Of a stretch of DNA of 64,000 bases, positions 29,635-31,341 are shown piece by piece (position 1 is the stretch's first letter; each line of letters begins with the position of its first letter). Location of the stretch: assembly GCA_053919585.1 (NCBI GenBank), contig CM132791.1; one strand, 5' to 3'. Under the pieces are notes generated by a model, which ran no database searches, was not told the origin of the DNA, and worked only from the letters and a program-made list of their open reading frames with translations. Origin of the DNA: Euprymna scolopes (Eukaryota). The translations under genes and the position numbers were made by a program.

Positions 29635-29666
<32 letters not shown>

Positions 29667-29670
<4 letters not shown>

Positions 29671-29901
29671 ATTTGTAAAATATATATGGCGATTAAGCTA
29701 CACTGAATATTCGGCGTTTCATCCACTCTAAGATTCGTCAGGCTTATAAGCCGAATATTCAGTGTAGCTTAATCGCCATATATATTTTATAAATTACTAA
29801 CTAGCTCTACCTACGTATTGAGCATTTTTTAAGTAAATACTTAAAGTTTACGCATAAATCTATACTTTCGTATATTAATTTTATGTGAGTAAATGAAGTA
29901 G

Positions 29902-29905
<4 letters not shown>
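29667..29905. mobile_element. HHR-bearing element inserted as head-to-head inverted arms within (TA)n
   Basis: 29667-29715 is the reverse complement of ~29750-29798. The plus arm continues to 29905 and matches 2888-3040. (TA)n lies on both sides. Confidence 0.8.
29694..29746 (-). ncRNA. Type I hammerhead ribozyme (intact core)
   Basis: Minus: taagc-CTGACGA-atct tagagt ggat-GAAA-cgccgaatattcagt-GTA-gctta. 5-bp stem I, 4-bp stem II, near-palindromic stem III, GUA triplet. Confidence 0.8.
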
Positions 29906-29934
<29 letters not shown>

Positions 29935-29945
<11 letters not shown>

Positions 29946-30285
29946 TTTAAAATATAATTATCCACTGACATGTGTTTCGTCGTCTACGACTCATCAGAAT
30001 AGATGTATCTAGTGAGATTCGAAATCGGGACCCTGCGGTAATGAGCCTAAACCCTTTATCCGCGCGTCCATCCCGCTCGACAGTCTGGATGTATCGCGAT
30101 TTATTTAGATGTTATTTGTTTTTACGATACGTTTTGAATGAATTCAATTATTTACGAAAGTGCATTTTTACCTAAATACGAGTTGCAAATAATTTTCCCT
30201 TTAACCAACTTTGTACCCCCATATGGGGAGAGGCATATATATTATTTTTTAAAATATAATTATCCAGTGACACGTGTTTCGTCGT
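29935..30285 (-). mobile_element. Retrozyme/SINE-like element: 302-nt monomer plus ~50-nt terminal redundancy, with tRNA-like head and HHR
   Basis: Direct repeat 29935-29983 / 30236-30285. GTC cleavage triplets are 302 nt apart (plus-strand gac at 29967 and 30269). A/B-box-like region at 30010-30080. Flanked by (TA)n. Confidence 0.75.
29960..30004 (-). ncRNA. Minimal type I hammerhead ribozyme (intact core)
   Basis: Minus: atctatt-CTGATGA-gtcg taga cgac-GAAA-c acat-GTC-agtggat. 7-bp stem I (2 GU), perfect 4-bp stem II, minimal stem III, GUC triplet. Confidence 0.85.
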
Positions 30286-30314
30286 ATATATATATATAAT
30301 TATTTACTATAATA

Positions 30315-30455
30315 ATTATCAAATACCTACAGACACTAGTGTTTCAGTGCAGGGTCTCACGATTAACACCAGTCGATGGATTCGAACCTGGAGAAAAAAA
30401 CCCTCTCTGGTTTCATTAGCAAATACCGTATCCATTCGGCTACCGGTAACAGCGT
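30315..30455 (-). mobile_element. tRNA-headed SINE-like element with HHR 3' half
   Basis: Minus: ggtagccgaatggata (A box)...ggttcgaatcc (B box)...GAAAC actagt GTC (palindromic stem III); the CTGANGA box is missing. Confidence 0.55.
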
Positions 30456-31341
30456 GAAATAAATTTGAAATTTAAACATTTTATTTTTAAATGTTTTTGA
30501 CGTCAGTCAGAGTGATTTAATAATTATATGATGGTCTGTGCATAAGAGCTAAATTGACCGACTTAATTCAACTGAAAGTTCACAACGATAAGAAACGCGT
30601 TTCTTAAAGGGGCTGACACAATTATTTACTATACNNNNNNNNNNNNNNNNNNNNNNNNNNNNNNNNNNNNNNNNNNNNNNNNNNNNNNNNNNNNNNNNNN
30701 NNNNNNNNNNNNNNNNNNNNNNNNNNNNNNNNNNNNNNNNNNNNNNNNNNNNNNNNNNNNNNNNNNNNNNNNNNNNNNNNNNNNNNNNNNNNNNNNNNNN
30801 NNNNNNNNNNNNNNNNNNNNNNNNNNNNGTTGACTGGGTTCAAAAACAGCCTACAGAAAATACACTCTGATTTATGAAAATATGATAGGTTATGAAAAGG
30901 AAGGGTTGTAAAGAGATAGCTTCGAATTTGGGGGTATCAAAACCAAAGCAAAATATGATGAAAGTAAAAATAAAATAGATAAACCCCATAATTTATTATA
31001 CCATACCTGTTCACACTGAAACACTTATCACAATATTCTGTGGATCTATATTAAAAAAAACTTGTTAAACTTTGTGACATATTTCCATTCTATGGAGGTC
31101 AGGCGCGAACAAACACCCCATAATTTTATTATACCATATTTCTTCAAACTGAAACATAATTATCAAAATATACTTATGCAGATAAATATGAAAAGTCTTT
31201 ATTAAAGTTTGTGCCTATTTCCATTCTATGGAGGTTAGGCGCGAACGCAGACCCCACAATTTTATTATACCATCCCTATTTAAGTTAAAACATACTTATC
31301 AAAGTATTCTTATGTACATCTATATCAAAAACACTTGTAAA

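What the first reader, a model, noticed from the sequence alone, without database searches (positions are those of the whole stretch)
29935..30285. Circularly permuted 302-nt retrozyme-like monomer with an internal tRNA-type promoter just upstream of an intact hammerhead
Seen (minus strand): the insertion starts mid-HHR (acgac-GAAA-cacgt-GTC). It runs through ~155 nt of spacer and a tRNA-like segment (tggacgcgcggataa...gatttcgaatctc), then a complete HHR (CTGATGA gtcg-taga-cgac GAAA cacat GTC), and repeats ~50 nt. The two GTC sites are exactly 302 nt apart, both ends lie in (TA)n, and a TTTT follows ~15 nt after the cut. Established: non-LTR retrozymes are short HHR-delimited monomers that form circular RNAs; schistosome Sm-alpha couples Pol III boxes with an HHR. 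Inference: this ~1.15-mer is what reverse transcription around a circular (or multimeric) RNA would leave, pointing to a Pol III-driven circRNA retroelement family possibly undescribed in this lineage.
Basis: partly seen in the sequence, partly recalled or inferred. Interest (0 to 1): 0.88.

Follow-up and report, generated by a model that had tools for sequence, protein, structure and literature searches.

The report
Decayed hammerhead retroelement copy, Penelope-style
This is one old, 5'-truncated copy of a very abundant small non-coding jumping element that carries a self-cutting hammerhead RNA motif and was pasted into a (TA)n microsatellite the way Penelope-like retrotransposons insert; the kind is known, and the proposed tRNA-type promoter does not hold up.

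Summary
The sequence facts are real. On the minus strand there is a complete type I hammerhead (core 29997-29967). A 5'-cut second hammerhead ends 302 nt upstream. About 33 nt after the cut site are repeated, and (TA)n lies on both sides.

The copy belongs to a dispersed family with a 307-nt unit. The 5.9-Gb mollusc genome holds 15,323 hammerhead motifs within 2 mismatches of the family consensus, against 0 for the reversed control.

In 72 copies:
- 5' ends vary.
- 3' ends fall at two internal sites: about 33 nt after the cut, or an AC-rich stretch at about 157-175 nt.
- No copy reaches 2 units.
- The cut-site junction is always seamless.
- About half the unbiased sample sits in head-to-head inverted pairs.

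These are the published insertion marks of Penelope-like elements (PLEs). Coding PLEs in this genome also end in (TA)n and also form inverted pairs.

The "tRNA-type promoter" is not supported. ARAGORN and Rfam find no tRNA, and box matches this weak occur in 47% of shuffles.

Poly(A) RNA reads are mostly chimeric with flanks, lie on both strands, and show no ends at the cut site. No circle is shown.

Verdict: a new member of a known kind (non-LTR retrozyme / non-autonomous PLE-type element). The scan reached the same reading for other families in this genome.

The parts
29934..30288 (-). The whole insertion, about 1.16 units of the 307-nt family unit. It reads: 5'-cut hammerhead remnant, one full unit (302 nt here), then the first ~33 nt of the next unit. 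Both borders are blurred by (TA)n.
   Evidence: L001 = this locus: q3 to q33, 93% to consensus; 284 of 308 aligned columns identical to the consensus
30269..30288 (-). 5' remnant. Only the 3' half of a hammerhead is present (helix II 3' strand, GAAA, helix III, GTC). This is a 5' truncation at about unit position 285-289.
   Evidence: Other copies (L002, L016, L026) are cut at nearly the same place, while most carry a full upstream hammerhead.
29967..30268 (-). One full unit from cut site to cut site (302 nt; consensus 307 nt, this copy lacks 6 nt in the A-rich stretch).
29960..30004 (-). Complete type I hammerhead. It has an open helix I, a 4-bp helix II with loop TAGA, and a 2-bp helix III with a 4-nt loop. 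The predicted cut is 3' of the C at 29967.
   Evidence: RF00163, 25.4 bits, E 0.0012; (folds)
29934..29966 (-). Terminal ~33 nt that repeat the start of the unit. This is the family's 'class A' 3' end, i.e. the place where reverse transcription began.
   Evidence: 22 of 33 and 13 of 39 copies end here
30010..30082 (-). GC-rich imperfect long hairpin just upstream of the hammerhead. It is not a recognisable tRNA. A hot spot of 5' ends (unit position 241) lies on its 3' side.
   Evidence: no tRNA, boxes not above chance; hairpin in the circular fold; 6 of 39 copies start at q241
30099..30129 (-). AC-rich stretch (AAAAACAAATAACATCTA). In other copies it is the alternative 'class B' 3' end, followed by in-phase microsatellite tails. 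It is internal in this copy.
29903..29933 (.). (TA)n tract downstream of the insertion: the target microsatellite and/or tail.
30289..30303 (.). (TA)7 upstream of the insertion: the other half of the target microsatellite. No target-site duplication can be read.

Best explanation
The locus is a dead, roughly 7% diverged copy of a high-copy, non-coding retroelement family. The family unit is 307 nt and carries one canonical metazoan type I hammerhead.

The family is best read as a non-LTR retrozyme in the sense of a non-autonomous passenger of Penelope-like elements (PLEs).

Inferred mechanism:
1. A PLE protein (reverse transcriptase plus GIY-YIG nuclease) cuts a (TA)n microsatellite.
2. It starts reverse transcription not at an RNA end but at one of two internal sites downstream of the hammerhead: about 33 nt after the cut site, or an AC-rich stretch at about 157-175 nt.
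3. It copies backwards through the still-joined cut-site junction of a multimeric (or re-ligated circular) RNA.
4. It stops at a variable point.

In the window copy it started at +33, ran one full unit, and stopped inside helix II of the next hammerhead upstream. That gives the '1.15-mer' that looks circularly permuted.

When both DNA strands are primed, the result is a head-to-head inverted pair, usually with one arm ending at each start site.

The consensus hammerhead has a palindromic helix III. It is predicted to act as a double hammerhead between two units. The window copy has lost that ability.

Shown here: family size, end positions, seamless junctions, inverted pairs, the (TA)n context, and coding PLEs with the same insertion marks.

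Inferred, not shown: which PLE moves the family, the internal start of reverse transcription, ribozyme activity, and the promoter.
For: Family size:
- 15,323 motifs lie within 2 mismatches of the 31-nt consensus hammerhead, and 4,934 match the 24-nt core exactly. The reversed control gives 0.
- Copies are dispersed over all chromosomes.

Architecture in 72 copies:
- 5' ends are variable.
- 3' ends fall in two classes (q15-36 and q140-180).
- The longest copy is 1.88 units.
- 10 head-to-head pairs occur among 39 unbiased copies, and 6 of those pairs are A/B.
- 3' flanks are mostly (TA)n.
- Class B copies carry (CT)n, (TCTA)n or (CA)n tails in phase with the last bases, followed by (TA)n.

Junction and coding capacity:
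- Of the 90 distinct hammerhead 3'-end motif hits found in these loci, about 80 run on without a break into the start of the unit; the rest are stray motif hits in flanks.
- The longest ATG ORF in a consensus trimer is 46 aa, and GC is 41%.
- The consensus hammerhead is predicted to form a dimer with an 8-bp intermolecular helix III, at -28.5 against 2 x -10.1 kcal/mol.

PLEs of this genome:
- There are at least 15,396 first-look GIY-YIG candidates, with open frames up to 870 aa.
- One ORF carries RVT_1 plus a C-terminal GIY-YIG.
- Their copies end in (TA)n, and about 12 of 30 loci have an inverted 5'-truncated arm.

Literature:
- PLE insertions show 5' truncation, partial tandems, adjacent inverted copies, a tail at one end, and (TA)n targets (PMC8557442).
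- Reverse transcription starts internally at two sites in an AC-rich region downstream of the hammerhead on unprocessed RNA, and both DNA strands are cut and extended (PMC11167929).
- Animal retrozymes derive from PLE pLTRs (10.64898/2026.07.22.740005).
- Canonical metazoan type I hammerheads have a 4-bp helix II and a 1-2-bp helix III with a palindromic loop, and act as dimers (PMC4209133).
Against: - No sequence likeness was found between the unit and the one PLE family I could read (3' 1.8 kb plus 3' UTR). The only shared element is a short AACAAT(C)ATA at the 3' border. The partner is therefore unknown.
- Long tandem arrays, typical of the retrozymes first described in corals and axolotl, are absent from the sample.
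- No RNA of unit length, no ends at the cut site and no circle junction were seen. Only poly(A) libraries were laid.
- Class A ends could partly be later deletions between an expanded internal (TA)n and the flanking (TA)n. Four copies show such an internal expansion.
- The sample is 72 copies of more than 15,000.
Confidence: 0.78

Rival explanations
1. A Pol III-driven retrozyme: an internal tRNA-type promoter transcribes the unit, the hammerhead cuts it, a ligase closes a 302-307-nt circle, and reverse transcription running round the circle leaves the 1.15-mer.
For: - More-than-one-unit permuted copies with seamless cut-site junctions.
- A canonical type I hammerhead of the retrozyme type.
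- A TTCGAATC core just upstream of the hammerhead.
- The circular fold is more stable than shuffles, z = -3.4.
- Retrozyme circles are documented in mussel and coral (PMC7229834).
Against: - No tRNA by ARAGORN or Rfam, and A/B-box matches at chance level. The B-box-like site lacks the conserved GG.
- The conserved TTTT at +15-18 would stop Pol III after about 140 nt.
- No copy of 2 or more units in 72.
- In four poly(A) RNA runs, depth over unit positions 178-240 is near zero, 72-80% of laid reads run on into unlike flanks, both strands are read, and no ends pile up at the cut site.
- Only 53% of the circle is paired.
Confidence: 0.1
2. An ordinary SINE moved by a LINE with a microsatellite-type tail. 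The hammerhead is a passenger module, as in Sm-alpha of schistosomes.
For: Copies are dispersed, 5'-truncated and have fixed 3' end regions followed by simple repeats. Other hammerhead-bearing SINE-like repeats are noted in this genome.
Against: - There is no fixed 5' head.
- Copies run through the supposed 3' end into another unit. 29 of 33 and 7 of 39 copies are 1 unit or longer.
- Head-to-head arms with two different 3' ends, and the (TA)n target, match PLE insertions of the same genome rather than LINE insertions.
- No tRNA-derived head.
Confidence: 0.07
3. A local DNA-level event, not retrotransposition: a satellite remnant or replication slippage in (TA)n that duplicated about 50 bp.
For: (TA)n tracts are unstable, and the two repeated 43-mers differ at 3 places.
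Against: The same partial-unit architecture recurs at dozens of unlinked loci with different flanks. There are more than 15,000 dispersed hammerhead motifs, and no long arrays.
Confidence: 0.03

Closest known systems
Metazoan non-LTR retrozymes (Cervera and de la Pena 2020, PMC7229834)
   Same: - Unit of 170-400 nt (here 307), GC below 50% (41%).
- No ORF, LTR, PBS or PPT.
- One canonical type I hammerhead per unit, with a short palindromic helix III.
- Thousands of copies, and co-existence with PLEs.
- Described in a mollusc (mussel).
   Different: - This family is dispersed as 0.2-1.9-unit pieces, not arrays of up to tens of units.
- Circular RNA was not shown, and poly(A) RNA data give no hint of it.
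- Only about half of the unit is self-paired in the predicted circle.
Penelope-like elements and their non-autonomous derivatives (PMC8557442; PMC11167929; bioRxiv 10.64898/2026.07.22.740005)
   Same: - 5' truncation, partial tandem ('pseudo-LTR'), adjacent inverted 5'-truncated arm.
- An extension present at one end only, and a (TA)n target.
- 3' ends at two internal sites, one of them AC-rich, downstream of the hammerhead.
- No reads or copies ending at the ribozyme cut site.
   Different: - The two start sites are about 125-140 nt apart, against 30-40 nt in the anole element.
- The hammerhead is the canonical 4-bp-helix-II type, not the minimal PLE type.
- No likeness to the pLTR of the PLE family sampled here.
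- In-phase (CT)n, (TCTA)n and (CA)n tails are not, to my knowledge, described for endonuclease-bearing PLEs.
Sm-alpha of Schistosoma (tRNA-derived SINE with a hammerhead)
   Same: A short, non-coding, dispersed, high-copy element with a type I hammerhead.
   Different: Sm-alpha has a recognisable Pol III head at a fixed 5' end. This family has neither.
Newt/salamander satellite 2 hammerhead repeats
   Same: A unit of about 330 nt, with a hammerhead whose weak palindromic helix III makes it work as a dimer.
   Different: Those form long tandem arrays. This family does not in the sample.

Membership tests
Metazoan non-LTR retrozyme | Type I hammerhead with the conserved catalytic core | tested here: met
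   RF00163 scores 25.4 bits (window) and 28.2/27.8 bits (consensus-like copy L003), E 1e-3 to 6e-5, all below the gathering score of 34. Core letters are intact.
Metazoan non-LTR retrozyme | Short unit (about 150-450 nt), low GC, no ORF, LTR, PBS or PPT | tested here: met
   307-nt consensus, GC 41%, longest ORF 46 aa. PBS and PPT were not searched for specifically.
Metazoan non-LTR retrozyme | Head-to-tail tandem repeats (dimers to long arrays) | tested here: inconclusive
   Partial tandems are common: 36 of 72 copies are 1 unit or longer. None reaches 2 units. Only 2 tandem pairs occur among the first 100 exact core motifs.
Metazoan non-LTR retrozyme | Expressed as linear and circular RNA of unit length | tested here: inconclusive
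   Four poly(A) RNA-seq runs show reads mostly chimeric with flanks, no ends at the cut site, and near-zero depth at unit positions 178-240. Total or RNase R-treated RNA was not available to me.
Metazoan non-LTR retrozyme | Self-cleavage of the hammerhead | not testable with these tools
   Folding only. The consensus is predicted to form a double hammerhead, and the window copy is not.
PLE-mobilised non-autonomous element | PLE insertion marks: 5' truncation, partial tandem, adjacent inverted 5'-truncated arm, extension at one end | tested here: met
   10 head-to-head pairs among 39 copies, 6 of them with one class A and one class B end.
PLE-mobilised non-autonomous element | Insertion into (TA)n, as for PLE clades with the CX2-5CxxC linker | tested here: met
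   (TA)n follows 22 of 35 class A ends. It follows, directly or after a short other tail, most class B ends. It often lies at the 5' side too.
PLE-mobilised non-autonomous element | Coding PLEs present in the same genome | tested here: met
   RVT_1 plus C-terminal GIY-YIG ORF; at least 15,396 candidates; same (TA)n ends and inverted arms.
PLE-mobilised non-autonomous element | Sequence likeness to the terminus or pLTR of a coding PLE | tested here: not met
   No blastn match between the unit and 30 PLE loci, apart from one nested insertion. Only AACAAT(C)ATA at the 3' border is shared.
tRNA-derived Pol III SINE (Sm-alpha-like) | tRNA-related head with A and B boxes | tested here: not met
   ARAGORN and Rfam find none. 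The box pair has 3 + 3 mismatches, as in 47% of shuffles.
tRNA-derived Pol III SINE (Sm-alpha-like) | Defined 5' end at the head and no internal Pol III terminator | tested here: not met
   5' ends are scattered. A conserved TTTT lies at +15-18 inside the unit.
Hammerhead satellite DNA (newt satellite 2 type) | Long head-to-tail arrays | tested here: not met
   No copy of 2 or more units in 72. Motifs are dispersed about one per 0.4 Mb.

The most novel reading that the evidence does not exclude
The family records two mechanistic habits of a PLE-type reverse transcriptase that are not yet described for endonuclease-bearing PLEs.

(i) In one integration event the two DNA strands are primed at two different internal template sites about 130 nt apart. 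This gives inverted pairs with one short-ended and one long-ended arm.

(ii) At the AC-rich site the enzyme first copies the last 2-4 template bases again and again, as telomerase does. This builds (CA)n, (CT)n or (TCTA)n tails in phase with the element end, between the element and the (TA)n target.
Probability: 0.3. Interest if true: 0.55.

Novelty: new member of a known kind. Interest (0 to 1): 0.27.

Why it matters
For this locus, little: it is a decayed repeat copy with no sign of a function.

For the family, it adds a large, well-behaved mollusc example to the view that animal 'retrozymes' are passengers of Penelope-like elements. Its thousands of copies form a natural record of where that poorly understood enzyme starts and stops copying.

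It also warns that box-like words next to hammerheads in this genome should not be read as Pol III promoters without a statistical test.

Tried and rejected
- Rfam at gathering score over the whole window gave nothing. The hammerhead only shows at E-value thresholds.
- tRNA tests with ARAGORN (including relaxed thresholds), Rfam and an A/B-box scan against shuffles all failed.
- I looked for the family's hammerhead or unit in 30 coding-PLE loci and found none.
The PLE 5' ends and a wider copy census could not be done.
I did not try to get round it.
These would be 5' ends exactly at the cut site or 3' ends at it. I found 1 of 39 5' ends at position 1 and no 3' end at 307, which is not above chance.
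- I tested whether hammerhead conservation exceeds the rest of the unit. It does not. Conservation is flat at 80-99% apart from CpG-rich and A-run spots, as expected for neutrally decaying copies.
- A 'goes back 283' joint in one RNA run (4 reads, 2 starts) was considered as a circle junction. I rejected it because it skips the cut site and has an extra letter, so it is more likely a genomic variant.

Full report
**1. What is in the window**

Read on the minus strand, the stretch 30288-29934 holds, in order:
- the 3' half of a hammerhead, ending in GTC at 30269;
- 302 nt of unique sequence that ends in a complete hammerhead core at 29997-29967;
- a repeat of the first ~33 nt of the unit;
- a long (TA)n.

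Another (TA)7 lies directly upstream. The complete core is the only such match in the window, and 100 shuffles give none. A 43-nt direct repeat at 93% identity is spaced exactly 302 nt.

Rfam finds nothing at gathering score. At E-value thresholds it reports Hammerhead_1 (type I) at 30004-29960 with 25.4 bits, E 0.0012.

**2. It is one copy of a very large family**

A search of the window's own genome gave dozens of 86-92% identical copies on many chromosomes, from 6,262 first-look candidates. The genome is 5.9 Gb in 925 contigs. Public run labels point to a mollusc.

The 31-nt consensus hammerhead occurs 15,323 times within 2 mismatches, and the 24-nt core occurs 4,934 times exactly. The reversed control gives 0.

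From 27 full units I built a 307-nt consensus. The window unit matches it in 284 of 308 aligned columns. The unit has no ORF over 46 aa and 41% GC.

**3. Architecture of the copies**

I mapped 72 distinct copies (at least 60 nt, at least 80% identity) in 60 loci onto the consensus. Thirty loci were picked by likeness to the window copy. Thirty were picked only by a perfect hammerhead, in order along one chromosome, and I treat these as the unbiased sample.

- *5' ends* are scattered. There is a hot spot at unit position 241 (6 of 39 in the unbiased sample), at the 3' side of a GC-rich hairpin.
- *3' ends* fall in two classes. Class A lies about 23-34 nt after the cut site, at AACAATAT, and runs into (TA)n. 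Class B lies at an AC-rich stretch at about 157-175.
- *Class B tails.* After class B ends there is often a short microsatellite in phase with the last bases: (CA)n after AACA, (CT)n after ATCT, (TCTA)n after ATCTA. (TA)n follows.
- *5' flanks.* (TA)n is frequent at the 5' flank as well.
- *Length.* No copy reaches 2 units (maximum 1.88). 36 of 72 are 1 unit or longer.
- *Inverted pairs.* In the unbiased sample, 20 of 39 copies sit in 10 head-to-head inverted pairs joined at their 5' ends. Six of those pairs have one class A and one class B arm.
- *Junction.* Of 90 hammerhead 3' ends, essentially all run on seamlessly into the start of the unit, and none marks a copy end.
- *Dispersion.* Among the first 100 exact core motifs there are 2 tandem pairs (spacing 304-306) and 3 inverted pairs, with no triplet.

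The window copy is a single-arm class A copy. Its 5' end lies inside helix II of the upstream hammerhead.

**4. What this matches**

Published descriptions of Penelope-like elements list these marks (PMC8557442):
- strong 5' truncation;
- partial tandems;
- an inverted 5'-truncated copy next to the 5' end;
- an extension at one end only;
- a preference for (TA)n.

In-vitro work with an anole PLE (PMC11167929) showed that:
- the protein cuts and extends both DNA strands;
- it starts reverse transcription at two internal sites in an AC-rich region downstream of the hammerhead;
- it uses unprocessed multi-copy RNA;
- no RNA-seq reads end at the ribozyme site.

This genome is full of PLEs:
- There are at least 15,396 first-look GIY-YIG candidates, with open frames up to 870 aa.
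- One ORF carries RVT_1 plus a C-terminal GIY-YIG.
- One locus (L076) has the next PLE's ORF start directly after a copy's 3' end; its two GIY-YIG hits lie 2.9 kb apart on the same strand.
- Their 3' ends abut (TA)n, and about 12 of 30 loci have an inverted arm.

The hammerhead family shares every one of these marks. I could not find its coding partner. The unit has no blastn likeness to the PLE family I could read. Only a short AACAAT(C)ATA at the 3' border is shared.

**5. The hammerhead**

The consensus has:
- a 5-bp open helix I;
- a 4-bp helix II with a tetraloop;
- a 2-bp helix III capped by the palindromic ACGU.

This is the 'canonical metazoan type I' form, said to act as a dimer (PMC4209133). 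Two copies are predicted to pair through an 8-bp intermolecular helix III, at -28.5 against 2 x -10.1 kcal/mol.

In the window copy four helix I letters have changed (leaving two G.U pairs) and one loop 3 letter has changed. The hammerhead is not its minimum-energy fold, and the dimer helix III is lost. The upstream hammerhead is cut in half. The core is intact, but the locus is unlikely to make an active ribozyme.

**6. The promoter claim**

- ARAGORN finds no tRNA in the window.
- On the consensus it finds none down to 80% of its thresholds. At 70% it reports a fold at 192-269, but shuffles give 341 hits in 200 sequences at that setting.
- Rfam reports no tRNA at E up to 10.
- The best A-box and B-box matches have 3 mismatches each. 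A correctly spaced pair of that quality occurs in 935 of 2000 shuffles.
- The segment folds as a long imperfect hairpin.
- The conserved TTTT at +15-18 would end a Pol III transcript after about 140 nt.

The claim is not supported.

**7. RNA**

I laid four raw poly(A) RNA-seq runs of the same species label, from two studies, on a 97%-consensus 1.3-unit copy. Each run gave 238-903 reads from about 12% of the run.
- Both strands are read.
- 72-80% of laid reads run on into unlike flanks.
- No pile-up of starts or ends appears anywhere, including at the cut site.
- Depth is about 0-3 over unit positions 178-240.
- Much of one peak comes from a single locus with constant flanks.

This looks like passive transcription of truncated copies inside longer RNAs. 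It argues against an abundant full-unit RNA in these samples. Poly(A) libraries are a weak test for a small circle.

Related species also hold the family, at 34-47% of sampled words.

**8. Verdict**

It is wrong or unproven in its novel parts: the Pol III promoter and the obligatory circle.

The element is a new family member of a known kind. Earlier follow-ups of this scan reached the same reading for other hammerhead families of this genome.

The family's two start sites, the A/B pairing of inverted arms and the in-phase tails are the only points that might repay a genome-wide census.

Noticed in passing
window 30298-30633: A ~320-bp repeat bounded by direct 14-mers (AATTATTTACTATA). It holds an A-box-like TAGCCGAATGG and a perfect B box GGTTCGAATCC. 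It abuts the hammerhead copy through (TA)7. The same repeat end, inverted, abuts another family copy in L028/L029. ARAGORN and Rfam do not call it a tRNA. It is probably a tRNA-derived SINE that also lands in (TA)n.
   Followed up: partly
window 29647-29818: A palindromic element with 78-nt arms (82% complementary) set in (TA)n, with a hammerhead-like CTGACGA...GAAAC on the minus strand at 29741. Rfam only gives spurious miRNA-hairpin matches. A relative lies in the 3' flank of a PLE copy (L089).
   Followed up: no
L061-L090 (e.g. L080, L076): The dominant PLE of this genome has RVT_1 plus a C-terminal GIY-YIG in open frames of about 806 aa. In L076 the next PLE's ORF start follows directly after a copy's 3' end, with two GIY-YIG hits 2.9 kb apart on the same strand. 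An internal poly(A) run follows the stop codon. The 3' end ...CAACAATCA runs into (TA)n, and head-to-head arms are frequent. About 90 nt before its 3' end lies a degenerate hammerhead-like CTTGAAGAAGCCCG...CGGGCGAAAC that Rfam does not score.
   Followed up: partly
L005:1988, L013:2526 and 3075(-), L028:1428: A second hammerhead type with a different helix II (CTGATGATTCC..AAAGGATGAAACAC...). It lies within 0.2-1.3 kb of copies of this family, so it belongs to another hammerhead family of the same genome.
   Followed up: no
L008, L016, L026, L030, L033, L039, L040, L047, L052, L053 (3' ends of class B copies): Tails of (CT)n, (TCTA)n or (CA)n start in phase with the last bases of the element (AACA / ATCT / ATCTA). 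They sit between the element and the (TA)n target. This suggests repeated copying of the template end at the start of reverse transcription.
   Followed up: partly
L035, L037, L039, L049, L052, L059 (unit position 241): Six of 39 unbiased copies begin at exactly the same base (GGGTCCCGA...), at the 3' side of the GC-rich hairpin. This could be a stop of the reverse transcriptase or an RNA 5' end. Unexplained.
   Followed up: no
L026, L040, L047, L052 (unit positions 24-33): The internal ATATGTAT of the unit has grown into a (TA)n tract of tens of bases inside otherwise continuous copies. Some 'class A' ends may therefore be later deletions between this tract and the flanking (TA)n.
   Followed up: partly
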